64,000 nt of DNA from Octopus bimaculoides (taxonomy: Eukaryota), in NCBI RefSeq assembly GCF_001194135.2, contig NC_068997.1, positions 37,850,984-37,914,983 on the forward strand, read 5' to 3'. The notes under the pieces were generated by a model that was not told the DNA's origin, searched no databases, and worked only from the letters and a program-made list of their open reading frames with translations. Positions 4,996-52,592 of the stretch are shown piece by piece. How positions within the stretch are numbered: the stretch's first letter is position 1; every line of letters begins with the position of its first letter. Position numbers and translations under genes: made by a program.

Positions 4996-5014
4996 GGATG
5001 TGAGGATAATATTA

Positions 5015-5385
5015 TTATGACCACTTCCTCGGCGAAGGCGGAGATATTGTTTTTAGTCGTTTGTTTGTTTGTTTGTGGACAAGATATCTCAAGCACTGCT
5101 AGATGGATTCGGATGAAACTTTCAAATTATGTTTGGCCTTGTGACTGGCATGAACTGATAAGATTTTGGAATCTATCCGGTACCGGAAAGAGATTCTGGA
5201 TAATTTTTCCTGTTTTTTTACTTAATTTTTGAAAGCGGTCGGGTTCATTTTTAGTATTTTCGTTTGTGAGAGTAGTCAAGTTTATTCCAGATATTCTCAT
5301 TTTAAAAATCACCTCCGGCTAATCGTTGATACAACGTTGTTGTTGCTTTGGCAGAGGTTTGTGATCCCTGAGTGTTCTTCTTCTT
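5015..5385 (+). mobile_element. HINE/DINE-1-like (Helentron-associated) non-autonomous element
   Basis: 5' cctcggcgaaggcggag palindrome, then a (gttt)n core and agatggattcggatgaaact. 3' ctttggcagaggtttgtgatccctgagtg is a sub-terminal inverted match to the 5' motif. This is the architecture of HINE-type repeats. Confidence 0.55.
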
Positions 5386-5389
5386 ATCA

Positions 5390-8300
5390 TTATTCCTTCG
5401 TAACACAGTGTAGGTAAAAATGCACCGGAATCTTTAGTCATCTGTCAAGTTACAAGGACCTCAGACATAATACTTTCCTTAAGATGTGCGCTGTGCCCAA
5501 TAAGGCTACTTTTGCAAAACCATCAATTTTGCATGGGATTTCCAGTTGCCTTAATAAGTCTTGAAGTTTCAACGCTCTGATCACTACTGGTATCACTTTT
5601 ACATTACCCTCTCGCATTCCATGCAGTCTCGCCATTTCCACTTTCAAATCGAAGTACTTGGTGATTTTTTTCAACCTCTTTACTCATGTATGGCTACATG
5701 AATGATCTGACAGTATTTGTCTCTCTTATTCAATATGACAACATCCAGCCGACAGTTTTCTATTATGCAACCTGTCTGAAGATCATAGTCCCAGAATATC
5801 GTTACTTTCGCATCCTCCTACATAACTTTATTTGGTACATGCTTATACCAGTTCTCTGTTACTTCATACTGGTATTTACGGGGCATAAAAGCCAATGAAG
5901 ATACACACGCACTTTATCATGGCGGCGCTTGTATTTCTTTTTTTTTTGCAAGGCTCTCACATTCAGTTACCAAGTGGGTCACATTTTCCACTCTCTTTCC
6001 AGAGTCTACATTTCTGGCTGCCAGAAGTTTTATAGGTGTTATACTTCACTGAGTTTGTAGCGAGAGCCTGGTCTTGTGCAGCAATGATCAGGCTTTCGGT
6101 GTTACGCTTCAAATCACCATGCCCACGATGCTGTATTATCCTTAACGTCCTGTGTATTCCTTTCAAACTGTCCATGCATTCTCATTTCAAGAAGGTCATC
6201 TTTTCTATTCTTCTCAGCTGTTCGGTTAAACTCTTCCTTGCCCACCATTTCATCTGCATTTACACACATATCTTTCGCGGCATATTTCAGTAGGTCTTCA
6301 TCACTATTTATCAAATACTCGGCAAGCGTTCTCCTTTTACTCCTTATACAATAGTCTATACTAATTAGTCGTCTGCCACCATTCTTTCTTTTCATATACA
6401 GTTTTTACGTTTGCTTTAGGGTGTAGCGCCCCATGCAGCGTCATCAACTTTCTCGTCCTTCTATCCAGTGATGGAATTTTCTCCTTAGTCCATCTGAGGA
6501 TGGACGCACTATATCTGGCCACCGCAATTGCCCACAAATTCATTGCGGTAATCAAATCTTTGGTATTCAGGTTGATTTCAACACCATCTTCACCCATTTT
6601 TGATACGCCTCGCTGATCTTGACTTTCATTTCTTTGTGTAGAATGTCATCCAGTTCTAAAATCCCTAAATATCTATACCCACTACTGTCGGGTTCAACCA
6701 TGGTCTCTCCTGATGGTAACTGAAATCCTCTGCAGAATGCATTCTTCTCTAATTTCATATTAAGTACTGAGAATTTTGTAACCCCATATTTCACACCGAT
6801 GTCCCTACCACACTTCTGGAATGTTTTGGTTAAGGGATCTATCTGTTTTTCAAATTTTCCAAACAATTTAAGGTCATCCATAAACAGAAGATGGTTCAAT
6901 GATGGGCTTTTCTTCCCACATCGGTAACCTATCTGAACTTTCCTAAGTGTCATTGTTATGGGTATTAGTGCAATTACAAATAGGAACGGAGGAAACAAGT
7001 CACCTTGGAAGATTCCCCTATTAATATTAACTTCTCCAAGGAATACATTCCTTGAGTACAATTTGGTTTTCACTCTTATATGCTATGCATCAGAAAATTT
7101 GTGATGTTGTCAGCAACACCAAACATCACTAAACATATTCAACGATCCAAGAATGAAGCATCATATCATATGGTTTCTTAAAGTCAGTCTAAGCAATAGA
7201 CATGTTTGTATGATGTTTTTTACAATGCCTCAAAACTGTTTTATCGATGACCAGGTGATCCTTGGTACACTAAGTAATCTTCCTACATCCTTTTTGTTTC
7301 CTTTGTAGTATTTCTTCCTGTGCCAGGAAAGTGTATGTCTGCCGCACACATTCCAGTGAGTATCTTTCAGATTATATTTAGGCATGCTACGGTAGTTTCC
7401 CATAATATTCCCCTTTCTTTTATCTTTCATTATAAGTGTTGTCTTCTCAGTCACCATCCACGCGGGAACTGTACCTTTCTGGACACACTCATTCAATTGG
7501 GCTGCTAGTCTTTCATGCACCGCGTGGCATCTCTTCATCCAGAAGCCATGAATCCCATCTGGTCCGGGGGCTTTCTTGTCAGATACTTGTTAGATACCCA
7601 CTTGTTTTTTCACGTTACCCGTGCTTATGACAAGATTCCTTTGTTTCTTTCCTCCTTGTAATTCTGTCTGGAGAGTTCCTATCCATATTGCATCCCTTTT
7701 ATGTACCACATTATTTCCCCATCATCCGCTCCACAACTCTTTGACTTCATTTGCATCAGGAGCAACATTTTCCTCATTGTCACCTTCTAACGTTCGGAAG
7801 AATTGCTTCGGGTTATTTTGAACAATCTATTCTCGAACTGCTTATTTCTGTTCACAAATCTTTTGATCTTCTGGATTTTTGCCATGATCCTCTTTTTTAA
7901 CTGCTCTATTACTGCATCAAACCAGTTCTTCTGTATTTTATATTTCTTCTCTAATTTTTCTCGGTCGGTATTGTACCCATTTTTCCAGTTTCCTCTTAAC
8001 AATTGCTCAATTTTTCCTAGATCTTGCTTTGCCCACATTATGTCCCTTTCAATGCGTCGTTTCCACCATGGTTCTTTTGCTCCATCATTTTTTGTTATTT
8101 TAATTTGTAATTTCTCCTCAACAAGTACCGCAGTAGCTCGAAGAAGATTCCTTGTTTGTGTTATGTCCTCCGTCTGGATGTATGGTATAACAGTATTTAT
8201 CTTTCGTGTTACTTTATTTATCATACTCCTATCTACCCATCCCATATTCCTGGGAACTTTTTTCTTCTGGGGCATTCATCAAGTCAGCAAGACGTCTTTG

Positions 8301-9199: not shown

Positions 9200-9420
9200 A
9201 TAATATGGGTCCCGGTATATTGCAGCAGATCTTCGTCTCTATTTACCAAATACTCGGCCAGCGTTCTCCTTTCACTCATTCTAGAATGGTCTATAATAAT
9301 CAGTCCTCTGCCACCATTCTTTCTTTTCATACACAGTCTGTTTACGTTTACAGTTAACACTTAGTACTATCTTTTGCGCTCCCTGCATGAATGGTAATCC
9401 ATGGGGTCATTCTCAGCTAA
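9200..9420 (-). mobile_element. R4/Dong fragment, same family as copy B
   Basis: ORF 9172-9360 (CMKRKNGGRGLIIIDHSRMSERRTLAEYLVNRDEDLLQY) is homologous to 6114-6395. Confidence 0.8.
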
Positions 9421-12034: not shown

Positions 12035-12460
12035 TTCTCTTTTACTCTTTTATTCTTTTATTTGTTTCGCTCATTTGACTGCGGCCATGGTGGAGCACTA
12101 ACTTTAGTCGAGAAAATCGACCCCAGGACTTATTCTTTGTAAGCCGAGTACTTATTCTATCGGTTTCTTAAGCCTAACCGCTAAGTTACGGGGACGTAAG
12201 CAAATCAGCGTCGGTTGTCAAACGATGGTGGGGGAACAAACACAGACACAGACACAGACACAGACACACACACATACACACATACGCATATATATATGGC
12301 AGGCTTCTTTCAGTTTCCGTCTATCAAATCCATTCAGAAGGCTTTGGTCGGTCCGAAGTTATAGTAGAAGACACTTGCCCAAGGTGTCACGCAGTGGGAT
12401 TGAACCTGAAACCATGTGGTTGGTAAGCAAGCTACTTACCACACAGCCACTCTTGCGTCT
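12033..12460 (-). mobile_element. tRNA-derived CORE-type SINE (family 1)
   Basis: Head gcaagagtggctgtgtggtaagtagcttg with a box-B-like ggtttcaggttcaatccc, CORE-like accttgggcaagtgtctt, internal (TG)n and a taaaagag tail. Homologous to 27598-28125. Confidence 0.85.
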
Positions 12461-13203: not shown

Positions 13204-13568
13204 GATCCCCAAAATGTCCAATGCCATTCCCTGCATATTTGGTTTTATATCAGAGTGACCTTCTCCTAGAGACATGCTTCAACAAAAGCTGAGGGGCGCC
13301 TCACTCCCAGTGGTCTTTCAGCACGCCGGACACCATCCCGGAATTTCTGCGTACCCGTGCTATTGCTAGATAGCTGTTGAGCCTGCACTAGGTCCATCCG
13401 AGTTTTCGACAGGTCTTGTTTTTAATCCTGCTGGGTTTCTAGCAACCCTCCTCACCAGGGTAGCCTGGTGGGGGTGCCAGTTTAGTCGCCGGCAACCCGA
13501 CCATGCAACAGGTTGTACTGGATTACATGTTACCAGTAGCACTTATGAGAGCCTCATATGTGACCTGA
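13204..13568 (-). mobile_element. 5' end of an RTE-like LINE (5' UTR plus start of APE), cut by an assembly gap
   Basis: Minus strand ctctaggagaaggtcactctgatataaaacc resembles RTE-type 5' regions. It is followed by NMQGMALDILGI, which resembles the DILGISE motif of the AP endonuclease. Confidence 0.5.
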
Positions 13569-13849
13569 CATACATACATACATACATACATACATATGTG
13601 TATGCTAGCTGACGTACGCGGTAATTCCCGGAAAAGCAGGGCTTATACCTTGGTTCCGTTCTCATAATTATTTCGCTAATCCAATAATAACAATACAAAG
13701 TAGGTAGCTCTTAAAACGGTTTTTTGCATTTACAGAAAATACTGAACTGTTTTACACAGAATCTTGTTTTTAGGAATCCCCAATAAGTTATGAATACCCA
13801 AACTGTGAAGTCAGTTATGTAATAACCAAATGTAGCTTGAACTCGGGTG

Positions 13850-15977: not shown

Positions 15978-16333
15978 ACATGGCTGGGTGGTAAGAAGCT
16001 TGCTTTCCAACCACATGGTTCCGGGTTCAGTCCCACTGTGTGGCACCTTGGGCGGGTTTTCTCTACTATAGCTTCGGGATAGCCAACGCCTTCTGAGTGG
16101 ATTTGATAGACGGAAACTGAAAGAAGCCCGGCGTATATATATGTATATATGTTTGTGTGTCTGTGTTTGTCCCCCAACACCGCTTGACAACCGATGATGA
16201 TGTGTTTACATCACCGTAACTTAGCGGTTCGGCAAAACATCCCGATAGAATAAGTACTAGGCTTACAAAGAATAAGTCCTGGAATCGACTTGTTCGACTA
16301 AAAGCGGTGCTCCAGCATATCCGCAGTCAAATG
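15978..16333 (+). mobile_element. SINE family 1
   Basis: tggctgggtggtaagaagcttgc...ggttccgggttcagtccc...gtcaaatgactgaagccaataaaaga. Confidence 0.85.
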
Positions 16334-16349
16334 ACTGAAGCCAATAAAA

Positions 16350-16422
<73 letters not shown>

Positions 16423-17967: not shown

Positions 17968-18014
17968 CGTGACGTAATCCGTAAACACACTAGCATCGGT
18001 TGTCAAGCGATGTT

Positions 18015-18067
<53 letters not shown>

Positions 18068-18208
18068 CGACGGGCCTCTTTCATTTGCCTTCGACCAAAT
18101 CCACTCACAAGGCTTTGTCGAGCCGAGGCTATAGTAGAAGTCACTTGCCCAAGGTACCATGCAGTGGGACTGAACCCGGAACTATGTGATTGGTAAGCAA
18201 ACTACTTT
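17968..18208 (-). mobile_element. SINE family 1, partial
   Basis: Reverse complement of the family 1 head, core and middle (cttgcccaagg...gtgggactgaacccggaac). Confidence 0.8.
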
Positions 18209-23060: not shown

Positions 23061-23643
23061 CGTCCCAAGTCAGCCCAGCAGAAAGCTGGGCTATTGCTGA
23101 GCAATAATAATGTATGACCAGACTATTTGATAAATAAATCAAACCAAACGAATATAAAAATCGCCACTATAGGGTAGGACAAAAGTTTCAGTGAGAAATA
23201 TGTGAGGACTACCAAATCGACACCCCTTACTGGTATGGACATGGTCCTAATCCAGTGGCTGAAGGTGAAAATGTTCCCAGCTTATGGGATTTTCCTATCA
23301 ATACTGGTAGAAAAATCCAGACATAATCATTAAAGATAGGAATGTAAATATTTGTAAAGTGATAGATATAAGTGTCTCCGCCGTGGTCAAGGAACTTGAT
23401 AGCTCAGTAAATATAAGTACCTGGAAATTGAAATACAAAACGTGGTACTTTAAGCGAAAACAGCCCCTGAATGTATTTCTGTACTGTCTTCACCTTCTGT
23501 CCTCAAACTTTGCTCTTGGCGTCTGGATCATTCGGCAAGTGATAGTATCAAACATGCTAATGAAAAAGCAAATAATTTTTTTTTTTAATTTCAAATTTTA
23601 GCTCAAGGCCAGCAATTTTGGGGAAGAGGTATGCAAATGCAAT

Positions 23644-24771: not shown

Positions 24772-24834
24772 TTTGGAGACGAAGGATACAACATATACAC
24801 ACATACCAAGTCGGAGGTAAGAAGGAAATGTGGA

Positions 24835-26327
24835 GCTGTATACAACAGCTAATAGTTAACAAAATGAGTTCAGAAAAAACAAAAAATCGCATAAACTTAA
24901 CAGACTGGATTACCAAAAGCATTTCGATAGTATACCTATCACTTTTCACAACGGGTTTGTGCATGTTGCATTTTCCTTGCTCAATTTCATCTCGGATCAG
25001 CCAATCCTTGCGTACATAATGTTCAGCTCTTGCTCTGGAATTCCATACGCACAGGAAGCAGCAAAATTCAGTATATCCAAGCTGAAGGCCAGTAAGCATG
25101 GCCACAACCTTAAAATCTGCACAAATATGCCAGGTATGGTCATCATACTGTATGCCTGTTAGAATTGCTTTCAGATTTTCATATGATTCTTTCATGGTTG
25201 TGCTATAAGCTATGGAAACAGAAGGCAGAGTATTACCATTGCGTAGTAGAACAGCTTTGATACTGTCCTTGGATGCATCTATGAAAAGTCGCCAGTCGGT
25301 TTTATCATATGGTATTTCCAGTTGCTCAAAAAGTTCAGTGATGTCATTACAAAGGCATAAATCATCCTTCATGGTGAATAATGCAAGTAAATCCTCTGTA
25401 CGCATTCTGTACAGTGTTATCTTCACTCCTTTCTCAAGAAGATTACGTTCTTGAAGCCTTGATGCCAGAAACTCCCTTTTCTCTTTGGTTAAATAGAGAT
25501 CCCTGCACAAGTCATTCAGAGCCTCTTGAGAAAATGGTATTGGTTTCTTCTCGCTTTCTGGATCATTGGGCTCCACACATTCACCACTGGAATGTTCATC
25601 AGCACTGTTGGAACTCTGCATTTCTTCATCTGGAGTTTTGGAGACAGGTAAATTTTCTAAGTGCTCTACTGGGTGCATTGCTGATTGCAAATTTTGGTAA
25701 ACAATGTGTTTCTTTTTCTTTGCTGTAGTACAGCCTGTAAAGTCATGGTGACAGAAATAGCAATCATTAGAGTGATCTTTCTGCTCACGCCAAATCCTTG
25801 GCACACCAAACTTCATGTGAACATTTTTTCTGCATACCAGGCACTCAATGTCTTCACACATGTAAGGCAACACACATGAGGAGCCTATTACTTATCCTGG
25901 TCTCCTAAGTAATAATCGAAGTACGCCTTGTATAAATTTTTGATATGGCGTGTAACACTGCGCTTTTCTTTAGCAAAAGTCAATTCCCCACAGATATAAC
26001 AGAATCTGTTTGGATCATTTTTGCACTGTCTTGCACTCATTGTTGTAAACAAATAAGATCTGAAAGATAAAAACTAACATTAAACACGAGCTTTGAATCA
26101 CATTGTAGGTGTTACTAAGATTAGTCTCTAGCCCTGGGTTGAAATCCATTTTACAATGCGGTAGAAAATTTTATTTAATAATAATGACAAAAAGGGTATA
26201 CAGTGACAATTCTGAAGAAACCATGCTTAATTCAATAAAAGAAAAAGGTCAGAAATGGATTTCCTATGTCATTTTGCATATAAAAATGGCTACAGATCTC
26301 TTGTACTTTTATGAGTGTTGCACAGTG
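24835..26327 (-). mobile_element. Chapaev3-like (CMC) DNA transposon, internally deleted
   Basis: N-terminal CKNDPNRFCYICG...LGDQDK, FGVPRIWREQKDHSNDCYFC, DWRLFIDASKDSIKAVLL, WHICADFKVVAMLTGLQLGYTEFCCFLCVWNSRAR. CACTG terminus at 26327. The superfamily name is from my recall of the motifs. Confidence 0.75.
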
Positions 26328-26328
26328 T

Positions 26329-26564
26329 GGAGCAACAGGATACATAACAACACCCCTGGAGCAAAGAACGGCTGAGCTTGGAATCTTGGTGAGCGAATGC
26401 AAATCCTTAATTCATACGCTAAAAATAATCACGATATCTGGGACTATAAAAATCTGCAAGACCTTAAAATTCAAAGAGTGATAGTTAAATCAAGATACTT
26501 TCCTTCCCAAACTTGCTACCAAGTCGGTGGCCAGTCAAAATTTACTGTAAATTAAAAAGAGAAA
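26329..26564 (+). mobile_element. R4-clade 3' fragment ending in (ACAT)n
   Basis: GATGYITTPLEQRTAELGILVSECKSLIHTLKIITISGTIKICKTLKF* (R4 C-terminus), a short 3' UTR, then (ACAT)n. Confidence 0.7.
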
Positions 26565-26697
26565 ACATACATACATACATACATACATACAGACAGACAT
26601 ACAGACAGACAGACAGACAGACATACACACACACATACATACATACATACATACATACATGCATACATGCATACATACATACATACATACATACATG
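26565..26697. repeat. (ACAT)n/(ACAG)n compound microsatellite
   Basis: Visible tetranucleotide run. Confidence 0.95.
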
Positions 26698-27891
26698 CAT
26701 TGGAAGCGACAAGTCGCGTATTTGGCGTGGGATACTATTTATCGAAAATACGATGAATACTATCCCCAACTTTGAAACCACAACTATCAGCGCTGTTAAG
26801 TAACTGGTGAATCTTCAGATGAATTAACTGAGAGATACTTTTATCCATGATTGTAATGATTTAGGACTGAAACTTGAATTTACCACGCAGAGAGTTACTA
26901 CAAACAACATGACTGGACACATGATCAACAACACAACCAAGGAACAAAACGAAAACAACAGCTCAACAGATAAACAGATTCTTTCTAGCTGTAGAAGAAA
27001 CCATAATTTCAAAACTCATTTCTCTTGGAATTATGAATTGAATACTGATCTATTTAACTGCTTCAAAAAAGCGAAACAAAACTCTGCTGTTGGCTATATG
27101 AATCAACTGAAGTCATGTTGGGACGATCTGCACCAAGAATTAAATCATTTTACTGTGAAGGAATTACGCCAACAAGCAACATTTGTGGAACGTAAGAAGA
27201 AGGTTCGTGACTGTAACTTTATTAAAAAAAGACCTGAAATCAGTCTTCTTCCCAACTAAACAGTCCCCCTACTACGACTATGGTAAATAGCATGCAGAAT
27301 CCAACGATTATTGTTGTAGTAGTAATTGTAGCAAGGGTTATATATCGGTGAAATGTGCCCTTACTGAAATTTTCCGAGAAAAAATAGCTTTGGTTCTGAA
27401 GCACTCTCTTAAGGAGAGAGTATTCTCTACCAAAGTAAAAAAAAAAATACCAGATACGGTACTAAAATCTGTTAACGAAATTGGAGAGGAATATTTACAG
27501 CAGTGTAATGAACCTACATTCTGGCAGATTAACGCCTGTCTCTATGCTCTGTCTACTACTGCAAAGAAGTACATGAATGACATTCAAAAAGTGTACAAAG
27601 ACGCAGGAGTGGCTGTGTGGTAAGTAGCTTGCTTACCAACCACATGGTTCCAGGTTCAGTCCCACTGCGGGGCATCTTGGGAAAATGTCTTCTACTATAG
27701 CCTAGGGCCGACCAAAGCCTTGTGAGTGGATTTGGTAGACGGAAACTGAAAGAAGCCCGTCGTATATATGTATATGTATATNNNNNNNNNNNNNNNNNNN
27801 NNNNNNNNNNNNNNNNNNNNNNNNNNNNNNNNNNNNNNNNNNNNNNNNNNNNNNNNNNNNNNNNNNNNNNNNNNNNNNNNNNNNNNNNTAC

Positions 27892-27937
<46 letters not shown>

Positions 27938-30927
27938 TTGTCTGTGTTTGTCCCCCTAGCATTGCTTGACAACCGATGCTGGTGTGTTTATGTCCCCGTC
28001 ACTTAGCGGTTCGGCAAAAAGAGACAAAGAATAAGTCCCGGGGCTGACTTGCTCGACTAAAGACGGTGCTCCAGCGTGGCCGCAGTCAAATGACTGAAAC
28101 AAGTAAAAGAGTAAAAGAGTAAAACCAAAACAACAAAGAAAGTACCATCATGGTTTTTGAAGACAAAGAAAAAGATACCTGATTTACGGAAGACCATCAA
28201 CAATGTAATGATGTTTATTGCGTGCAAACAAGCAAATCATTATACCTCTCACCAACAAAAAGTGAAAAAGGAGAAAAATCATGATGTTTGGAGACAGCAA
28301 AAAGAGGACACTCACTTGCAAACTGATCACACTCAAGCAGGAGCTAAAATCTGTCAGTGAAAAACTCCGACATCAGAAGAGAATAACCAAGAGAAAAACA
28401 GTAAATAAAAAATTTCACCAGAACCAGGCAGCAGTATAGAGACACGAGGGGAGAAGCAGTGAACATCAGAGAAGCTCCTTCACGAGAAGACAGACTCCTT
28501 TTGGAGGAAAATCTGGAGTGAACAGAAGGAGATTAACCAAGATGCTCTGTGGCTGAAAGAAATCCGAAAAAGTTATTATCCCTGCATTACACCCAAGACA
28601 TACAGGATGGATGGTGATATTCATGTAAGTGTAATCAAGAAACCCCAGGATGGAAAAGCACCCGGAAAGATACTTGATTCTTGGATATTTGTACAAGATG
28701 GTAACCTTCACCCGTCCATTTCTTATCAACCTGTACCAACAATGGGTACAATAGCATACCACACTGGTTAGCCCTGGCAGTGACAAAATTGATCTTCCAG
28801 TGCAGAACCACCCACATAACAAAAGACTACCGGCCAGTTGCATGGCAGAACTTAATATATGATATACACAGCATGCTTAAACCTCTTCTTCCAAGACCAT
28901 TATGAAACCAGTAATATCATCACAACAGAACGAGCAGCTGGGAAGAAGTGAGTCTGACGATGTGCCGAGCAATTGTTAATAAAAAAAACTGTGGTGTCAG
29001 AGGTGCAGGAGCACAGGAGGAACCTAGTATCAATGTGGCTAGACTACAAGAAATTTTTGACTTTGTTCCCCACTCATGGATGCTAGAAGCCCTTCAACTT
29101 GCTAAAGTTCCAGTGAGAATAGTCAAAGCCATAGCCGACCTGATTCATCGTGGGTCACCATTTTGAAATTAAACACAAAGAGTGGCTGTATAATCACTGA
29201 TAGAATACAGTATCACAGAGGCATATTCCAAGGGGACAGCCTCTCTGTGATGTTGTTTATACTTTCTGTAAATCCTTTGTCATTCATGTTAAGAAAGTCT
29301 GAAGGATATCTCACTGGTTCACAAGCAAACGAAAATACCAAAAGTACCCACTGCTCGAGATGAAAAAGAGCCTTGACCTGGTTACAACATTCTCAAAGGA
29401 TATAGGCTGGAGTTTGGTCAGGATTAATTTTGTTATATGGTTGTGAAAAGGTGGGGAAACTGTAAACCAAACTAGTAACATCTCCATCAATGACTTGACT
29501 GTTTCCTTTGTATCTAATGAGGAATGCTGCATGTATCTAGGGATGGATGAAAAGATATCTTACAATGTCACCTGTAATAAAACGCATGGCACTCAAGAAT
29601 ATTACAACCGAATAAAGAAACTTTGGACCTCGGAATTCTCTGCATTCAATAAAACAGTGACCTACAATATATTTGCAGTGCCAGTATTCTTACCAACATT
29701 TGCATTTAGGTTGCTTGATTGGACGCTTGATAAGATCCGAGCTATTGATGTGAAAACCCAGAAAATACTAACTAGCACACAATTTCTCCATAAACAGTGA
29801 TGTAGATCGTCTCTACCTAAAACGAACACAAGGCGGCAGAGGTTTAACATCAATCCAAAGTGCCTTTGAATGTCGTATCATATCCCTTCGGAAACATCTT
29901 TTAGCCACCAAGTGTTGAAATGCATCCCATGACCAACTTTTCATACATGAGGCTGATAACATCATAAGACTTGGAAGGCAACTCCTTGAACAGCATTCCC
30001 TGTCTGATAACCTTAAATATATGCCCAAAGAAGTCGCACGACTCTACCGCAACGTATCTTCAGATGACAGGATAAGCATATATGAGCAGAAGATTGTGCA
30101 TGGATGTGTTAGTAGAATGTTCCGCGATGACAGTAACATGGATCATGAAAGCCGTTTATCATGGATCAACAACCGGATTACTACCTTCCACTTTGAAGGG
30201 TATGCGTTTTCAATCCAGGAATAGGAAATATCAATCAAATACCTGATGCACAAAAGATACAGAAGTGCAGGAAAAGCAGTAAAGTGTGAGAACCGATGCA
30301 GACTTTGTGGAATTGACATCGAATATATCAATCATATCATACGCAGTTGTCCAAAAATGTTATCACAGTATTAACTACCGATGAGACATGATGTAGCTAG
30401 GACACAATATAACGAGCTCCGTCGAAAGGATAACCCCGAGGACAAAGAAATAAGAACCTACAGTATGGTGGAAGCCAAAGCCACTCAAAATAAAAAGCAG
30501 TACTGGTGGAATGCCCCAGTGAAAACGCAAATAAAATGTAAACACAACAGACCTGTTATAATGATTTGGAATAGAGAAGAGAAACTATATACAATTGTGG
30601 AAATCAGCTGCTCAGCGAATGTTAACATGAAGCTGGAGATCAGTGAAAAGGAGAATATCCACGATGAACTATTGAGAAATCTGCAGTTACTCTATCCAGA
30701 TTACAAGTTCACGTCTTAATTGAGGCACTGGGATATACAACACGATGCCTAAATACCAATCTTGAGAATGTTAGGCTTCTGAAAACCAGAAAGGAGAAAC
30801 CTGATTCGAATACTACAGATCCAATCCATCACTGCAACTGTACATATAAGTATATATCAGCATGTCTACATATGCAAATATATGCATGAGAAGACATACA
30901 TGAAACAAAATATACAAATCTGCACGT
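26698..30927 (+). mobile_element. Near-full-length R4-clade retrotransposon flanked by (ACAT)n, pseudogenised, interrupted by a SINE
   Basis: N-terminal FSWNYELNTDLFNCFKKAKQNSAVGYMNQLKSCWD, RT RGIFQGDSLSVMLFILSVNPL, GGRGLTSI, CRLCGIDIEYINHIIRSCP, RLE KHNRPVIMIW..TIVEISC, C-terminal LQIQSITAT. Confidence 0.9.
27598..28125 (+). mobile_element. SINE family 1 inserted in the R4 element
   Basis: gacgcaggagtggctgtgtggtaagtagcttgc ... gtcaaatgactgaaacaagtaaaagagtaaaagag. Confidence 0.9.
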
Positions 30928-31015
30928 ATACATACATACATACATACATACATACATACATACATACATACATACACACATAGATACATACATGCATACA
31001 TACAAACATACATGT
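30928..31015. repeat. (ATAC)n microsatellite at the R4 3' end
   Basis: Visible run directly after the 3' UTR. Confidence 0.95.
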
Positions 31016-33756: not shown

Positions 33757-33788
<32 letters not shown>

Positions 33789-33847
33789 TGTATGTATGTA
33801 TGTATGTATATAGATCGGNNNNNNNNNNTATATATATATATAGTAAT

Positions 33848-42932: not shown

Positions 42933-43149
42933 ATCTCAAGTGTGATATTGACCGGCACAACGGTAGGCTAGAGTTAATCAACAGTGGAAGTTGCATATAC
43001 ACAGATAAAGTAGCGTGGATGCTATAGGACTAATGTTAGTTTAGGTGAGAATATTTGATTTAGTTAGGATATACTTGCAAGTAGACAGAGGAGTATAAAT
43101 AGGAAAAAAGCCTAAGAAAGACGAAAGAAAATGGAATGGAAAAAGATGT

Positions 43150-43683
43150 TTGTATTCCCGTTCACCTCTCTCGCAGTTCGTGAGAGAGGAGAACAGAAAT
43201 ACAGACGCCGATGAAAGAAGGCACTGGCTAAGGAAAATTTACATGAATCAAGGAACAGAAGCGCTTTTTTGTGCTGCGCAGAAACAAACACTTAGAACAA
43301 GTTGCACCAAATGCAGGGATGATAATACAGAAGAATGTGACAAGTGCAGAGTTTGCAGTGATAAAGGTGAGACTGAATGGCATATTGTGAATGAGTGCGC
43401 AAAGGTGTCCCCTCTCTCAAATACAAAAGAAGATACAATAATGTCGCAAGACTGATCCATTGGAAGGTGTATAACAAGTATGGATTGGATGGAGTAAATA
43501 CGTATTATGGACAAATTCCAGAACTAGACTCGAAAAGGACAAAATAAAGAAACTGAAACTTAATGATTATATGTGATCATGAAATTGAACTTCGAAAGCC
43601 AAATGTAATGGTTGTGGAATAAAGAGGACACATCTGTTTAATCATGACAAAGTAATGAAATAGAAAAGAAAAAAAAGAAGCAG

Positions 43684-43685
<2 letters not shown>
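43150..43685 (+). mobile_element. Old R4/Dong 3' fragment ending at (AAT)n
   Basis: ALFCAAQKQTLRT...CDKCRVCSDKGETEWHIVNECAK, and DHEIELRKPNVMVV (RLE PD region). Confidence 0.7.

Positions 43686-43760
<75 letters not shown>
43686..43760. repeat. (AAT)n microsatellite
   Basis: Pure run. Confidence 0.95.
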
Positions 43761-43932
43761 TATTCACTGGGTAATATGCAAAAACCTGGACTTGCCCCAA
43801 TATAAAAACTGGTGGGAACACAAACCACCCCCAGTACTTGAAAATGATCACATCGCACTCCTCTGGAACTTCACCATTCAAACTGACAGAAAGATAGACG
43901 CAAATAGGCCAGACATCATACTGAAAGACTTC
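43761..43932 (+). mobile_element. 5'-truncated R4/Dong copy starting at (AAT)n and running into a gap
   Basis: IHWVICKNLDLPQYKNWWEHKPPPVLENDHIALLWNFTIQTDRKIDANRPDIILKD. Confidence 0.85.
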
Positions 43933-45075: not shown

Positions 45076-47887
45076 CCACGATGTTTAACATATGAGAGCG
45101 ATAAAACACTGCTTCGAAATCTATCCAAAATCATCGGGAATAAAAACAACAAATGGAGCCTAAAATAACTGACAAAGTGTTGGACTATATCCGAGTAACT
45201 AATACACATTTCTATTTTCCGAATGAAATTATGTATTTTAACTATGTATCATCTCTGCCACGACAAGATCCCCAACTCCTGAATAAAATACCTAACAGGA
45301 ACACATAAAAAGCTGGCTGAGAAATTTAATGAAACGCCAGTAGAGCCAGAGATAATGCCTGACTGGCTCACGGAAGGGGAACTATCCTAATTCCCAAATC
45401 CACTGAAACGGCAATCGCATAAAATAGAGACTGATAACTTGCCTCACGACATTTTTACAAAGCCTTTACTGCAATAATATCGTAGAGAATGAGCAAACAT
45501 CTGGAAGAAAACAATCTGTTTCCAGAAGACCAGAACGGATGCTACAAGAGCTCATACGGATGTAAAGATCAGCTACTGATTAATAAAGCCATACCTGAAG
45601 GCAGCTCTAGAAAGAAGGGCGTAAGTATGGCCTGGATCGATTATCGAAAGGCTTTTGATAATATTCCCCACACACGGATCCTAGAAACAATATCCATGAA
45701 CAAGGTAGCACCAATATTCATAAAATATATAAAACATTCCATGAATGAATGGCAGACTGAGCTACAGCTCCAGACAAAGAGGGACTCATAAAAACAAAAG
45801 CCATCCCCATCAGAAGAGGAATATACCAAGAAGATACGCTCTCTCTCCGCCCCTTTCCTGCTTTGCACCTTTATCTGACATGCTAAACAGAACTGGGTGG
45901 GGATGCAACTATTACGGCAAAACAATCAGCCACCTTTTATATATGGATGATCTAAAACTGTACGCTACAAATGATAAACAGTTGGAAACATTACTATAGA
46001 CAGTACATGGATTTACCAAAGAGATAGACATTAAATTTGGCTTAGAAAAATGTGCCAAAGCAACCTTGAAAAGAGGGAAAGTAGTTAAGAATAGCAACAT
46101 CACACTAGATAAAGGAAAGGAAATAAGAGAATGAGACAAAAGCCAGACATACAAATACTTGTAAATCAATGAACTAGATACGATACAACACACACAAATG
46201 AAAGAGAAGGTAAGAAAAGAATACTATAGACGAGTAAGATTAATATTGAAAACAGAGACGAATGCGAAAAACAAGATAATAGGTATCAACACATTAGCCG
46301 TCCCAGTTATGAGTTACAGGTACAATATTCTTAACTGGACTCTGAATAAACTAATCAAAATAGAGAAAAAAAAAAATAATAATGACAGGATTTCGGATGC
46401 ACCACATGAAAGATCCTACCTTCACAAGTTTATATATACAACGTATCGAAGGTGTTAGAGGCCTTACACGGCTAGAAAATTATTACAAAATAACCACTAT
46501 AGGACTACAGAAATACCTACTTCAGAAGCAAGGAAAAAAATAGAAATAGCCGCAAAACACGAACAAAACAAAAAACTGTTTTCAGTCTTTAAGGAAGCTG
46601 ACAAATTCAAAACAGAAGTCATAGTACCTAACAACTATGAAGAAAAAGGAGAAACAACAAACGCTGTAAAACAAATGAAATCCAAGCTAAAGCTGGAACA
46701 ACAATGAATAATGATAAAACGATGCCCCTTCATGGAAAATATTGGGTTAAGCTAAACAAAAAAGAAATAGACAAAGCAAAATCCCAACAATGGCTGAGAA
46801 GCTCAGGCCTCAAAGCAGAGACTTAAGGATTTTTAATTGCAGCACAAGGTCAAAGCCTTCCCGCCAAAAATTACCAAAAACATGTAATGAAAAGAAATAC
46901 AACTGACTGCAGAATATGTGGAGATGGACAAGAAACAATAAATCATATTGTCTCTGGCTGCCCAATCCTACATAAGAAGGAATATATTCGCAGATACGAC
47001 AGAGTAGGGATCAATATATACTGGAATCTATGGAATAACAACAGAATAAAGATGGTATAGGTACACACTAGAAAAGGTCATAGAAAATGAGAAAGTAACC
47101 ATGCTCTGTGATATACCAATACAGACAGATAGAGAAATTTAAGCCAATATGCCAGATATAGCTATCAGTGATTACCAAGAAGAAAAATGCTTTCTAATCG
47201 ATGTATCAACACCAACAGATGACAGTGTTTCTCTAAAAGAAACGGAGAAACTTNNNNNNNNNNAAACAATAAATCATATTGTCTCTGGCTGCCCAATCCT
47301 ACATAAGAAGGAATATATTCGCAGATACGACAGAGTAGGGATCAATATATACTGGAATCTATGGAATAACAACAGAATAAAGATGGTATAGGTACACACT
47401 AGAAAAGGTCATAGAAAATGAGAAAGTAACCATGCTCTGTGATATACCAATACAGACAGATAGAGAAATTTAAGCCAATATGCCAGATATAGCTATCAGT
47501 GATTACCAAGAAGAAAAATGCTTTCTAATCGATGTATCAACACCAACAGATGACAGTGTTTCTCTAAAAGAAACGGAGAAACTTTCAAAATACAAAGATC
47601 TAGAAATAGAGGCAACTCGAATGTGAAGTCTAAAAATAGAAACAATTTCTATTACAGTAGGCACACTAGGTATGATAAAAAATATTCAGATAAATGCATA
47701 ACAAAAATAGTGGGACTAACAAGAATATATAACATACATAATATAACACTACTAGGCACCACATTCATCTTACTTAAAACATTTTCAATACAGTAACAAC
47801 ATCTCAACAAAGCACAGCACGTACTCAAGGCACACAGAGCTGAGCTTGGTACTGCAGTGAAAGCACATGATAAAAATAAGACTACTG
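45074..47887 (+). mobile_element. 5'-truncated R4/Dong retrotransposon with (AAT)n on both sides (contains an assembly duplication)
   Basis: GCKDQLLINKAI, SMAWIDYRKAFDNIPH, ISHLLYMDDLKLYA, KEYYRRVRLILKTE, CRICGDGQETINHIVSGCP, FLIDVSTPTD. The 3' UTR ends in aataacaacaacaataataat. Confidence 0.92.
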
Positions 47888-48164: not shown

Positions 48165-48193
<29 letters not shown>

Positions 48194-48196
<3 letters not shown>

Positions 48197-48698
48197 CTGT
48201 AGAATATGTGGAGATGGACAAGAAACAATAAATCATATTATTTCTGGCTGCCCATTCCTGGTTAAGAAGGAATATATTCACAGATACGACAGAGCTAGGA
48301 CCTATATACACTGGAAGCTATGCCAACACTATGGGATAACAACAGAAAAAAGATGGTGTAAACACACGCCAAAAAAGGTCACAGAAAATGAGAAAGCAAC
48401 CATACTCTGGGATATGCCAATACACACAGATAGAGAAATTAAGGCCAATAGACCAGATATAGTTGTCAAAGATCATGAAGAAAAAAAAATGCTTTCTAAT
48501 TGATGTATCAATACCAGCAGATGACAACGTTTCCCTAAAAGAAATGGAAAAACTTTCAAAATACAAAGACCTGGAAATAGAGGTAACTCGAATGTGGAAT
48601 CTAAAAACAGAAACAATTCCTATCATAGTAGGTGCCTTAGGTATAATAAATAAATATTCAGACAAATACATAACAAAAACACCAGGACTTACAAATAT
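48194..48698 (+). mobile_element. 5'-truncated R4/Dong copy starting at (AAT)n
   Basis: NCRICGDGQETINHIISGCP...ILWDMPIHTDREIKANRPDIVVKD, FLIDVSIPADDNVSLKEMEKLSKYKDLEIEV...IPIIVGALG. Confidence 0.9.
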
Positions 48699-49952
48699 NN
48701 NNNNNNNNNNNNNNNNNNNNNNNNNNNNNNNNNNNNNNNNNNNNNNNNNNNNNNNNNNNNNNNNNNNNNNNNNNNNNNNNNNNNNNNNNNNNNNNNNNNN
48801 NNNNNNNNNNNNNNNNNNNNNNNNNNNNNNNNNNNNNNNNNNNNNNNNNNNNNNNNNNNNNNNNNNNNNNNNNNNNNNNNNNNNNNNNNNNNNNNNNNNN
48901 NNNNNNNNNNNNNNNNNNNNNNNNNNNNNNNNNNNNNNNNNNNNNNNNNNNNNNNNNNNNNNNNNNNNNNNNNNNNNNNNNNNNNNNNNNNNNNNNNNNN
49001 NNNNNNNNNNNNNNNNNNNNNNNNNNNNNNNNNNNNNNNNNNNNNNNNNNNNNNNNNNNNNNNNNNNNNNNNNNNNNNNNNNNNNNNNNNNNNNNNNNNN
49101 NNNNNNNNNNNNNNNNNNNNNNNNNNNNNNNNNNNNNNNNNNNNNNNNNNNNNNNNNNNNNNNNNNNNNNNNNNNNNNNNNNNNNNNNNNNNNNNNNNNN
49201 NNNNNNNNNNNNNNNNNNNNNNTGTTTTCCGTACACCTAGGGCAGAGAAACGTTGTATGCATTCCCAATTTACACACGCAAATTCATAGGTAAAACATGT
49301 ATTTAAGAAGAAAAAAAAATCATGAATGGATGTTGTTTTCACAGCGATAATGCTCTTCTTAGTACATGAGTCGTTCCAGTTAGCACGATTTTTTGCACCT
49401 CCTGTAGAGATGGTAAGCCTGGTATCATTTTCAAATAGATTTCAAATAGATTTCAGTACCTTATTATTATTATTATTATTATTATCACTGATTTTATTGT
49501 TTTTATGGGTAGTAGCAGCAGTGGTTGCAGCAACAGCAATAGCAGTAGGGGTGGAGTAGTGGTAAGGGTGATAGTTGGGCCTCAGATTCTTGTGCTATCA
49601 TAATAGTAATAGTTGTATTATTATTGTAGTATTAATAGTATTTAGCAGTAACAGCTGCAGCATATTATTATTATTTTTATTTTTATTTTTATCATTATCA
49701 CCATCACCACCACAACCATTGTTTGAGGAACTAGTTGGGTAGCAGTTTGGTAAATAGATCATATTCTACAGGTCTGTAAATAGATTCGGCAAATGGTGGG
49801 GAGATCAGCCATAGAAACAAAGGAATTTTCGAACCCTTTGGTCAAATGTGTTTACTACTACCAGTGGCTGCTGACCACTGAGAGCGCTGCCTTGAAAAGA
49901 AGCAATTCAACCTGTTCTATTTGTAATTACTGATAGAAAAAACAATAATAAT

Positions 49953-51276: not shown

Positions 51277-51438
51277 ACGTGGCACAAATAGGGGCTGCAA
51301 TAAGGGTGGAGCACTTGCAGAAAACAGCACTGATTGGAACCGCTCGAATACTCCGCTCGAAAAATAAGAGGTGTTACCTTAGTTCACTGGTAGTGAACAG
51401 CTGACACTGTAATACATCTCCAGCGTTAGGAGCTGTGC
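51277..51438 (+). mobile_element. Extremely 5'-truncated R4/Dong 3' end between AAT repeats
   Basis: aataataat (51268-51276), then VAQIGAAIRVEHLQKTALIGTARILR, a short 3' UTR, then (AAT)n 51439-51497. Confidence 0.75.
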
Positions 51439-51440
51439 AA

Positions 51441-51497
<57 letters not shown>

Positions 51498-52592
51498 GAG
51501 AAGCAATTCTTCCGAACGTTAGAAGGTGACAATGGGGAAAATCTTGCTCCTGATGCAAATCAAGCCAAGGAATTCTGAAGCGGATTATGGGGAAATAATG
51601 TGGTGCATAAAAGGGATGCAATGTGGCTAGGAACTATCAAGACAGAATTACAAGGCGGAAAGAAACACAGGAATATTATCATAAGTATGGGTGACGTGAA
51701 AGAACAAGTGGGCAAAGCGCCTAACTTCAAAGCCCCCGGGCACGAAGGGATTCATGGCTTTTGACTGAAGGGATGCTACGTGGTGCATGGAAGACTAGCA
51801 GCCCAATTGAATGAGTGTGTCCAGAAACGTACAGTCCCCGCGTGGTTGGTGGCTAGGAGGACAATACTTATAATGGAAGATAAAAGAAAGGGGAATATTG
51901 TGGAAAACGACTGTCCCATACCATATCGAAACATAATTTGGAGTGTGTGCGGCAAAGATATATACTTTCCTGGCACAGGAAAAAATACTACCAAGGTAAC
52001 AAAAAGGATGTAGGAAGAATTCTCAGAGTACCAAGGATCACCTGGTCATCGATAAAACACTTTTGAGGCATTATAAAAAACATCATATAAACATGTCTAT
52101 GGCTTGGATTGGCTTTAAGAAGGCATATGGTATGAGGCCTCATTCTTGGATCGTTGAATGCCTGCAGATGTTTGGTGTTGCTGACATCACACATTTTCTG
52201 ATGCATAACATGAAAGGGTAGAAAACCAAATTGTACTCAAGGAATGTATTCCTTGGAGAAGTTAATATTAATAGGGGAATCTTCCAAGGTAACTCGTTTC
52301 CTCCGTTCCTATTTGTAATTGCACTAATACCCATAACAATGACACTTAGGAAAGTTAAGATAGGTTACCGATGTGGGAAGAAAAGCCCTTCATTGAACCA
52401 TCTTCTGTTTATGGATGACCTTAAATTGTTTGGAAAATTTGAAAAACAGATAAATTCCTTAACCAAAACATTCCAGAAGTGTGGTAGGGACATCGGTATG
52501 GAATTCGGGGGTTACAAAATTATCAGTACTTAATATGAAAATACGGAAGAAAGCATCCTGCAGAGGATTTCGGTTATCATCGGGAGAGACCA
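51498..52592 (+). mobile_element. R4/Dong RT fragment (copy B family) starting at (AAT)n
   Basis: Closely similar to the reverse complement of about 6700-7800 (gaagcaattcttccgaacgttagaaggtgacaatg...; INRGIFQG; LNHLLFMDDLKLFG). Confidence 0.9.

What the first reader, a model, noticed from the sequence alone, without database searches (positions are those of the whole stretch)
26329..31015. A second R4-clade lineage that appears to target (ACAT)n instead of (AAT)n
Seen: a near-full-length RT-RLE element (26698-30927, about 3.7 kb without the SINE) has (ACAT)n on its sense strand at both ends. An independent 3' fragment with a different 3' UTR (26329-26564) also ends in (ACAT)n. Both share a C-terminus (GYIT/GYTT...I.SITAT/ISGT.KICK) unlike the LQK.ALLGTA.ILR ending of the AAT-associated copies. 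Established: Dong (R4 clade) targets TAA repeats, and ACAY targeting is known for the APE-encoding R1-clade Waldo elements. I do not know of an ACAT-specific R4/RLE element. Inference: a target-specificity switch within R4, with both lineages coexisting in one genome, which could help locate specificity determinants in RLE elements.
Basis: partly seen in the sequence, partly recalled or inferred. Interest (0 to 1): 0.78.

Follow-up and report, generated by a model that had tools for sequence, protein, structure and literature searches.

The report
ACAT-repeat-targeting Dong-like retrotransposon relic
This is a dead copy of a jumping gene from a previously undescribed, widespread sister lineage of the Dong/R4 retrotransposons that inserts into (ACAT)n microsatellites instead of (TAA)n, which gives a natural system for finding what aims this class of elements.

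Summary
Window 26701-30927 (+) is a near-full-length but dead RT plus restriction-like-endonuclease (RLE) non-LTR retrotransposon. It has sense-strand (ACAT)n on both sides (26565-26700 and 30928-31013). A SINE at 27608-28124 interrupts it, and the assembly gap lies inside that SINE, not in the LINE coding sequence. An unrelated-at-DNA-level 3' fragment (26329-26564) ends in the same upstream array.

- An RT tree built with published reference sequences puts the element in the R4/Dong clade with 100% bootstrap, not in HERO, NeSL, R2 or CRE. It sits in a 100%-supported sister group of the (TAA)n-flanked Dong-like elements.
- About ten intact relatives (33-55% amino-acid identity) come from metagenome contigs and an Argonauta genome. 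Every visible end carries sense (ACAT)n. In two cases there is no upstream element.
- Control Dong-like loci carry (TAA)n.
- Some members of the same clade are instead flanked by (ACTT)n, and these do not form one group. Microsatellite targets have therefore switched repeatedly.

I found no ACAT-specific RLE element in the searchable literature. Repbase could not be checked. No empty site or biochemical evidence is available.

The parts
26329..26564 (+). 3' terminal fragment of a second ACAT-type element. It holds the C-terminal 50 codons (GATGYITT...ISGTIKICKTLKFKE, stop codon at 26479-26481) and an 83-nt 3' UTR. Its 5' flank is unique sequence with no ACAT.
   Evidence: Profile positions 1099-1148, 31.5 bits. 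No DNA similarity to the main copy. Its 3' end and hairpin resemble those of the Argonauta element L095.
26512..26534 (+). Conserved 3' UTR stem-loop CTTGCTACC-AAGTC-GGTGGCCAG in the fragment. Inferred to be the RNA feature recognised by the element's own reverse transcriptase.
   Evidence: RNAalifold on six family representatives gives 9 pairs, 5 of them kept through changes on both sides.
26565..26700 (+). Compound (ACAT)n/(ACAG)n/(AC)n array. It is at once the 3' tail of the fragment and the 5' flank (target) of the main copy.
   Evidence: TRF: period 4, 34 copies, 91% matches. Sequence.
26701..30927 (+). Near-full-length, inactivated ACAT-type R4/Dong-clade non-LTR retrotransposon. It spans 5' UTR, single ORF and 3' UTR. 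It is 3710 bp without the SINE.
   Evidence: Profile map covers positions 6-1093. tblastn with P0001. Homologue search. Trees.
26987..27229 (+). N-terminal three-helix domain (RRNHNFKTHFSWNYELN...LRQQATFVERKK). It is homologous to the N-terminal Myb/SANT-like domain described for Dong/R4 and is a candidate DNA-recognition module.
   Evidence: Profile positions 6-86, 79.8 bits. hhalign against the Dong-like N-terminus: 85.8% probability, E 5e-6. The AlphaFold2 model of the P0001 homologue has three helices, pLDDT 82. Foldseek and Pfam give nothing significant.
27608..28124 (+). Secondary insertion of a SINE with an internal microsatellite that holds the assembly gap 27782-27888. It is not part of the LINE.
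   Evidence: Three other copies in the window have both halves contiguous. The LINE profile is continuous across it, 215 to 216.
28484..29906 (+). Reverse-transcriptase domain, frameshifted, with the catalytic FxDD block deleted at 29351/29352.
   Evidence: Profile positions 338-827 with 631-643 missing. RVT_1 in the intact relatives.
30297..30350 (+). CCHC zinc knuckle (CRLCGIDIEYINHIIRSC) between the RT and the endonuclease.
   Evidence: zf-RVT weak hit. C/C/H/C are invariant in the relatives.
30549..30713 (+). Restriction-like (PD-(D/E)XK) endonuclease core. It is mutated here: RPD changed to RPV and CPxD changed to CSAN.
   Evidence: Profile positions 982-1093. The model of the P0001 C-terminus matches the R2 CCHC+RLE region: 9dou_A E 1.5e-9 with TM 0.73, 8gh6_A E 1e-4.
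30928..31013 (+). 3' (ACAT)n array: tail and downstream half of the target microsatellite.
   Evidence: TRF: period 4, 21.5 copies, 90% matches. Sequence.

Best explanation
The region is an old, inactivated insertion of a non-LTR retrotransposon. The element belongs to a distinct, widespread sub-lineage of the R4/Dong clade that integrates specifically into (ACAT)n microsatellites, always with ACAT on the element's sense strand.

Shown here:
- the anatomy of the element;
- its clade placement;
- the lineage-wide, two-sided, strand-specific association with (ACAT)n;
- the restriction-like endonuclease fold;
- a conserved 3' UTR hairpin.

Inferred from the established mechanism of R2/R4-type elements:
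- The single ORF protein has an N-terminal three-helix DNA-binding domain, an RT, a CCHC knuckle and a C-terminal restriction-like endonuclease.
- It binds its own RNA through the 3' UTR hairpin.
- It recognises the repeat and nicks the bottom strand.
- It then primes reverse transcription from that nick. The (ACAU)n at the RNA 3' end can pair with the nicked (ATGT)n strand.
- Insertion into the tail of an earlier copy produces head-to-tail arrays, such as fragment-(ACAT)n-element here.

The lineage is the sister of the (TAA)n-specific Dong-like elements that lie in the same window. It has itself given rise, apparently more than once, to (ACTT)n-flanked families.
For: Clade placement. I built an NJ tree on 448 RT columns with reference sequences from PMC5678591 supplement 10.
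- R4 + Dong + Dong-like + this group: 100% bootstrap.
- The ACAT/ACTT group: 100%.
- HERO, NeSL/Utopia, R2 and CRE fall outside.
- The best PDB sequence hits (R2) reach only E 1e-28, against 1e-68 to 1e-199 for R4/Dong-type proteins.

Flanks of intact relatives.
- 5' (ACAT)n: L001, L002, L003/L013, L004/L012, L006-L009, L014, L093, L095.
- 3' (ACAT)n: L002, L003/L013, L004/L012, L006-L009, L014, L092, plus a degenerate array in L095.
- No exception occurs where an end is visible.
- L001 has 4.4 kb and L095 has 4.1 kb upstream of the 5' array with no LINE remnant.

Controls. Dong-like loci L090 and L091 carry (AAT/TAA)n. So do L022, L025 and L027-L030, and the window's own Dong-like copies.

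Protein features.
- The C-terminal model matches the R2 CCHC+RLE region.
- The N-terminal domain is homologous to that of Dong-like elements.
- The 3' UTR hairpin shows compensatory changes.

Chance. The probability of the arrangement in the window arising by chance is about 1e-7.
Against: - No empty (pre-insertion) allele and no biochemical test exist, so specificity is inferred from flanks only.
- Most relatives sit on short metagenome contigs that end inside the repeats. For those, the 5' array could be the tail of an upstream copy.
- The window's 3' fragment has ACAT only on its 3' side, with a unique 5' flank.
- The main copy's 5' array is that fragment's tail.
- The N-terminal fold could not be assigned to Myb/SANT by Foldseek or Pfam.
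- No HDV-like 5' ribozyme was detected by Rfam. Such a ribozyme is known for Dong and R4.
- The tree is NJ only, and Rex6 and the Repbase R4 families were not available.
Confidence: 0.85

Rival explanations
1. The (ACAT)n is only a self-made 3' tail, as in LINEs that end in a simple repeat, and insertion is not targeted. Under this view the 5' arrays are just the tails of neighbouring copies, or they are assembly effects.
For: - In the window, the 5' array of the main copy is the tail of the upstream fragment.
- That fragment has no ACAT on its 5' side.
- Many supporting contigs end inside the repeats.
Against: - A randomly inserting element would not land in the tails of its relatives in every one of about ten families.
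- L001 and L095 have kilobases of non-element DNA upstream of a 5' array of 41 and 14 units.
- In L094 a 5'-truncated fragment of the ACTT type is flanked by the repeat on both sides.
- The sister Dong lineage shows the same two-sided pattern, and this is accepted as target specificity (PMC7998251, PMC3812793).
Confidence: 0.06
2. The biology is as described but not new. An ACAT-specific (or ACTT-specific) R4/Dong, Rex6 or HERO-type family is already catalogued in Repbase, Dfam or a subscription-journal paper.
For: - Kojima and Jurka state that some HERO families are microsatellite-specific and cite only a Repbase Report (PMC4640811).
- Repbase, Dfam and Kojima & Fujiwara 2004 could not be read.
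- Octopus 'Dong-R4' families are routinely annotated (PMC13282606).
Against: - Full-text searches for ACAT/CATA repeats with RLE or non-LTR terms found nothing relevant.
- Reviews list only (TAA)n for Dong and rDNA for R4 (PMC3812793, PMC7998251).
- The element is not in the HERO clade.
Confidence: 0.2
3. The association is passive. Elements of this lineage accumulate in, or themselves seed, ACAT-rich low-recombination regions, as proposed for Drosophila Waldo near CA repeats. No sequence-specific cleavage is involved.
For: The window is very rich in microsatellites and in nested transposable elements.
Against: - The junctions are exact. The arrays abut the 5' UTR and 3' UTR directly, are always in the sense orientation, and recur in unrelated source samples.
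- Only three sense ACAT arrays exist in the window, and two of them flank this element.
- The neighbouring Dong-like copies in the same region are flanked by TAA, not ACAT.
Confidence: 0.03

Closest known systems
Dong (Bombyx mori) and Dong-like elements of insects, molluscs and cnidarians (R4 clade)
   Same: - Same clade in the RT tree (100% bootstrap with R4; 88% for Dong plus this group excluding R4).
- Single ORF.
- N-terminal three-helix domain homologous by hhalign.
- RT, CCHC knuckle and C-terminal restriction-like endonuclease.
- Microsatellite on both sides on the sense strand.
- Head-to-tail arrays.
   Different: - The target repeat is (ACAT)n, or (ACTT)n in some members, not (TAA)n.
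- Only 25-28% amino-acid identity over the ORF (33-37% over the trimmed alignment columns).
- Different C-terminal signature: SGTVKIxKTF against LLGTAHILRK.
- The RT starts about 55 residues (P0048) to about 270 residues (P0053) nearer the N-terminus than in the Dong-like proteins.
- The 5' HDV-like ribozyme shown for Dong was not detected.
R4 of Ascaris and other nematodes
   Same: Same clade and the same domain order.
   Different: R4 targets one site in the large-subunit rRNA gene. It branches outside the Dong plus ACAT pair.
Waldo (R1 clade), specific for (ACAY)n
   Same: Almost the same target repeat, which makes this a case of convergence on ACAT-type microsatellites.
   Different: Waldo has an N-terminal AP-type endonuclease and belongs to an unrelated clade. 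The element here has a C-terminal restriction-like endonuclease and no AP endonuclease domain.
Other microsatellite-specific RLE elements: Togen (TG)n near NeSL, and some HERO families
   Same: RLE-bearing LINEs that target simple repeats.
   Different: They belong to different clades in the RT tree and have different repeats.
R2 (28S rDNA), the mechanistic model
   Same: The CCHC+RLE fold superposes on solved R2 structures (TM about 0.7). A 3' UTR RNA structure is probably used for template recognition.
   Different: R2 has N-terminal zinc fingers plus Myb and a single rDNA target. RT similarity is much weaker (E 1e-28).

Membership tests
R4 clade (R4/Dong) of RLE non-LTR retrotransposons | RT domain groups with Ascaris R4 and Bombyx Dong in a phylogeny of RLE LINEs. 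| tested here: met
   NJ tree, 448 columns, 200 bootstraps, references from PMC5678591 supplement 10. The R4 + Dong + this group clade has 100% support, and HERO, NeSL, R2 and CRE are excluded.
R4 clade (R4/Dong) of RLE non-LTR retrotransposons | Single ORF with RT followed by a CCHC motif and a C-terminal PD-(D/E)XK restriction-like endonuclease, and no AP endonuclease. | tested here: met
   The intact relatives are single ORFs of 1083-1162 aa. C/C/H/C, PD, D and K are invariant. The C-terminal model matches the R2 CCHC+RLE region at E 1.5e-9. Pfam finds only RVT_1 and zf-RVT.
R4 clade (R4/Dong) of RLE non-LTR retrotransposons | N-terminal Myb/SANT-like domain without zinc fingers (PMC7998251). 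| tested here: inconclusive
   The domain is homologous to the Dong-like N-terminus (hhalign 85.8%, E 5e-6). It is predicted as a three-helix bundle and has no Cys/His finger motif. Foldseek and Pfam give no significant Myb/SANT match.
R4 clade (R4/Dong) of RLE non-LTR retrotransposons | Insertion into a specific repeated target (rDNA or microsatellite). | tested here: met
   Two-sided, sense-strand (ACAT)n in about ten families and in the window.
R4 clade (R4/Dong) of RLE non-LTR retrotransposons | HDV-like self-cleaving ribozyme at the 5' end, as shown for R4 and Dong (PMC3774820). | tested here: inconclusive
   No Rfam HDV-like match even at E up to 10 on the 5' UTRs. A conserved 5' block exists but I could not fold it into the ribozyme. 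These ribozymes are hard to find by sequence.
Dong sensu stricto | Target is (TAA)n. | tested here: not met
   The flanks are (ACAT)n. The control Dong-like loci and the window's own Dong-like copies have (TAA)n.
Waldo (R1 clade, ACAY-specific) | N-terminal AP-type endonuclease and R1-clade RT. | tested here: not met
   There is no Exo_endo_phos domain. The endonuclease is C-terminal and restriction-like. The RT is in the R4 clade.
HERO clade | RT groups with HERO-1_BF, HERO-1_SP, HERO-1_PP and HERO-2_DR. | tested here: not met
   HERO forms its own 99% clade, far from this group.
Rex6 (teleost R4-clade family) | RT groups with Rex6. | not testable with these tools
   No Rex6 sequence was available. 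None of the 46 closest protein clusters is a named fish protein.

The most novel reading that the evidence does not exclude
The R4/Dong clade contains an old, animal-wide radiation of microsatellite specialists in which the target repeat has changed several times. The changes are (TAA)n to (ACAT)n, and (ACAT)n to or from (ACTT)n at least twice. Pairs of elements about 50% identical differ by a single base of a 4-nt target. If this is unreported, these natural ACAT/ACTT pairs would allow the residues or RNA features that aim RLE retrotransposons to be mapped by simple swaps. That question is central to re-aiming R2-type elements for gene insertion.
Probability: 0.5. Interest if true: 0.7.

Novelty: new variant of a known kind. 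Interest (0 to 1): 0.6.

Why it matters
How restriction-like-endonuclease retrotransposons choose their sites is only well understood for R2.

For R4/Dong even the DNA-binding domain was recognised only in 2021, and the only microsatellite target on record in the literature I could search is (TAA)n.

This lineage adds a sister group with a different 4-nt repeat target. Inside it are close relatives that use (ACTT)n. Together they give graded natural comparisons (TAA vs ACAT vs ACTT) for locating specificity determinants in three places:
- the N-terminal three-helix domain;
- the endonuclease;
- the 3' end of the RNA.

It is also a second, independent origin of ACAT-type targeting besides the AP-endonuclease Waldo elements.

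For genome annotation, it shows that 'Dong-R4' in cephalopods covers at least two lineages with different insertion niches.

Tried and rejected
- **Pfam on single ORF pieces of the window copy.** Nothing useful was found because the copy is too fragmented. I used a stitched query and a clade profile instead.
- **Rfam on the window region, on five loci and on two 5' UTRs at E up to 10.** Only low-complexity miRNA-like artefacts on the repeats, and no HDV-like ribozyme. A manual attempt to fit an HDV-like double pseudoknot to the conserved 5' block gave no pairing consistent across families, so I dropped it.
- **Foldseek of the N-terminal model.** No hit with E below 3.
- **Pfam on the N-termini.** Nothing found.
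- **Test of whether 24795-24940 and 26326-26472 are one degraded copy.** No recognisable coding remnant lies between them, so I left them as separate fragments.
- **blastn of the two 3' ends and the 5' end against the window.** No other copies were found. The other ACAT arrays (13568-13595 on +, 33760-33807 on -) have no detectable LINE remnant beside them.
- **R2-clade membership.** Rejected on weak similarity and on the tree.
- **HERO membership.** Rejected on the tree.
- **Kojima & Fujiwara 2004.** Could not be retrieved.
Full report
**What is in the window**

- A compound (ACAT)n array lies at 26565-26700 and a second one at 30928-31013. Both are on the + strand.
- Between them is 4227 bp of sequence that translates, in shifting frames, into an N-terminal domain, a reverse transcriptase, a CCHC knuckle and a PD-(D/E)XK-like motif.
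- A stitched translation finds 408 homologues. The best 46 clusters reach E 1e-91 to 1e-199, and the full-length ones among the best are single-ORF proteins of 1083-1162 aa, at only about 33-43% identity to the window copy.
- A profile of ten of these proteins (A1) maps positions 6-1093 of about 1150 onto 26987-30713. The copy is therefore near full length.
- It is dead. It has at least 11 frame changes and several stops. The catalytic FxDD block (profile 631-643) is deleted at 29351/29352. The endonuclease residues RPD and CPxD have become RPV and CSAN.

**The assembly gap**

I tested the gap first, as asked.
- 27608-28124 is a SINE.
- Its left and right halves occur contiguously, in the same order and orientation, in three other copies in the window. 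In each copy they are separated by a short variable microsatellite.
- The gap 27782-27888 sits in that internal microsatellite.
- The LINE profile stops at position 215 at 27596 and resumes at 216 at 28121.
- So the SINE is a clean secondary insertion, and the gap says nothing about the LINE reading frame.

**The upstream fragment**

- 26326-26472 matches profile positions 1099-1148. A stop codon and an 83-nt 3' UTR follow, and then the (ACAT)n array.
- It shares no DNA similarity with the 3' end of the main copy, so it comes from another family of the same lineage.
- Its 3' end resembles the Argonauta hians element.
- Two caveats apply. Its 5' flank is unique sequence without ACAT. Its tail is the very array that forms the 5' flank of the main copy.
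- In the window alone, therefore, the two-sided association rests on one array pair. The chance probability of that arrangement is about 1e-7.

**Evidence from elsewhere**

I fetched the DNA around intact relatives.

*Sense (ACAT)n directly abutting the 5' UTR:*
- L001 (41 units);
- L002;
- L003 and L013 (one family);
- L004 and L012 (one family);
- L006-L009 (one family, three samples);
- L014;
- L093;
- the Argonauta locus L095.

*Sense (ACAT)n directly abutting the 3' UTR:*
- L002;
- L003/L013;
- L004/L012;
- L006-L009;
- L014;
- L092;
- L095, where the array is degenerate.

No locus with a visible end is an exception, apart from the ACTT group described below.

The 4.4 kb upstream of the 5' array in L001 and the 4.1 kb upstream in L095 hold no LINE remnant. 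These are solo insertions into a microsatellite, not insertions into a neighbour's tail.

The control loci behave as expected.
- The more distant hits at 25-28% identity (L090, L091), the 32-36% loci L022, L025 and L027-L030, and all the other RLE-LINE pieces in the window are flanked by (TAA)n/(AAT)n.
- They also score better with a TAA-clade profile than with the ACAT-clade profile.

**Clade assignment**

- A published alignment of RLE LINEs supplied reference RT sequences (PMC5678591, supplement 10). It covers R2, R8, R9, Ascaris R4, Bombyx and Aedes Dong, CRE, HERO, NeSL and Utopia.
- I built an NJ tree on 448 columns with 200 bootstraps.
  - R4 + Dong + Dong-like + the present group: 100%.
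  - The present group alone: 100%.
  - Dong-like plus the present group, excluding R4: 88%.
  - HERO (99%), NeSL/Utopia, R2 and CRE fall outside.
- Sequence similarity to solved R2 proteins is far weaker, E 1e-28.
- An AlphaFold2 model of the C-terminal 215 residues of P0001 has pLDDT 86.6. It superposes on the CCHC+RLE part of R2 structures: 9dou_A at E 1.5e-9 with TM 0.73, and 8gh6_A at E 1e-4. The next hits are PD-(D/E)XK cap-snatching endonucleases.
- The N-terminal 80 residues align profile-to-profile with the N-terminus of the TAA-type proteins (85.8%, E 5e-6). The model is a three-helix bundle.
- This fits the Myb/SANT-like domain reported for R4/Dong (PMC7998251). Foldseek and Pfam give no significant assignment, however.

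**A further switch inside the clade**

- Three metagenome loci are flanked by sense (ACTT)n instead: L010 and L011 on the 5' side, L015 on the 3' side.
- A 9.7-Mb genomic contig (L094, family of P0013) shows the arrangement (CTTA)26 - element - (CTTA)29 - 5'-truncated fragment with the repeat on both sides - (CTTA)18 - element.
- In a tree on 815 columns the ACTT families are never monophyletic (0 of 300 bootstraps). L015 is basal (94%). L011 plus P0013 (97%) lie among ACAT families.
- The target has therefore changed between ACAT and ACTT more than once, or the ancestral state is ACTT. The internal nodes are weak (35-50%), so I would not fix the number of events.

**Mechanism**

*Shown:*
- the domain set;
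- the endonuclease fold;
- the strand-specific two-sided flanks;
- the head-to-tail arrays;
- a conserved 3' UTR stem-loop (CCUUGC-stem-loop-stem-CCGG, 40-50 nt from the 3' junction) with compensatory changes at 5 of its 9 predicted pairs, four of them in the 6-bp core stem, in six family representatives.

*Inferred from R2/R4 biology:*
- The protein binds this RNA feature and recognises the repeat. The N-terminal domain is the obvious candidate for that recognition.
- It nicks the bottom strand with the RLE and primes cDNA synthesis there.
- The 3' junction is mostly '...A|ACATACAT', so the RNA probably ends in (ACAU)n that can pair with the nicked strand.
- Because a transcript always copies the repeat it sits in, the RNA part of target matching would follow automatically after a rare off-target insertion. 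This may ease switches.
- Dong and R4 are released from co-transcripts by a 5' HDV-like ribozyme (PMC3774820). I found a conserved 5' block (GGACGTGTGGATTAYCGCTC) but no ribozyme match, so that step is open.

**Novelty**

- In the searchable literature, the microsatellite-specific LINEs are Waldo (ACAY), Mino (AC), Kibi (TC), Koshi (TTC), Dong (TAA), Togen (TG) and unnamed HERO families (PMC3812793, PMC4640811).
- Six targeted searches found no ACAT- or ACTT-specific RLE element.
- Repbase, Dfam and Kojima & Fujiwara 2004 could not be consulted. I put about 0.2 on it being catalogued already.

**Verdict**

- The thing in the window is itself an ordinary dead transposon copy.
- The lineage it reveals is a new variant of a known kind: a new target specificity, with a further switch, within the R4/Dong clade.
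- What is missing is a genome-wide census, empty sites and biochemistry.

Noticed in passing
L010 401-476; L011 1-56; L015 4651-4694; L094 3388-3491, 7908-8023, 8710-9007, 9824-9895: Close relatives of the ACAT lineage (40-56% identity) are flanked by sense (ACTT)n instead. These include a head-to-tail array on a 9.7-Mb genomic contig. The ACTT families are not monophyletic in the tree.
   Followed up: partly
window 26512-26534; L002, L003, L004, L092, L095, about 40-50 nt before the 3' junction: A conserved 3' UTR stem-loop, CCTTGC-stem-loop-stem-CCGG, keeps 5 of its 9 predicted pairs (four of them in the 6-bp core stem) through compensatory changes. It was not found in the window's main copy, L006 or L014.
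   Followed up: partly
window 26722-26745; L003, L004, L012, L013, L092 (20-45 nt inside the 5' junction); weaker in L006, L093, L011: A conserved 5' UTR block, GGACGTGTGGATTAYCGCTC, is present. It may be part of a promoter or of a self-cleaving ribozyme like that of Dong and R4. There is no Rfam match and I found no consistent fold.
   Followed up: partly
window 46933-47584: An exact 331-bp tandem duplication straddles the 10-N gap 47254-47263 inside a TAA-type LINE copy. The same protein segment is read twice. It looks like a scaffolding artefact rather than biology.
   Followed up: no
window 12040-12452 (-), 15981-16351 (+), 17982-18207 (-), 27608-28124 (+): Four copies of one SINE are present, each with an internal variable microsatellite. 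Several assembly gaps in the window abut such simple repeats, which suggests the gaps mark repeat-collapse points.
   Followed up: partly
window 24795-24940 (+): An isolated ACAT-type RT fragment (profile 486-537) lies 1.4 kb upstream of the 3' fragment. No recognisable coding remnant joins them.
   Followed up: yes
proteins P0075 and P0053 (TAA-type Dong-like; L091): Some (TAA)n-flanked Dong-like proteins carry an extra N-terminal OTU-like cysteine protease domain. P0075 has PF02338 on record, and P0053 has a DGHCLLHS motif.
   Followed up: no
window 3026-8224 (-), 9214-9351 (-), 23198-23382, 43144-43929, 45283-47790, 48165-48690, 49345-49446 (-), 51279-52518: At least eight pieces of TAA-type Dong-like elements are scattered through the window, most next to (TAA)n/(AAT)n arrays. 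Both lineages are therefore abundant in this stretch of genome.
   Followed up: partly
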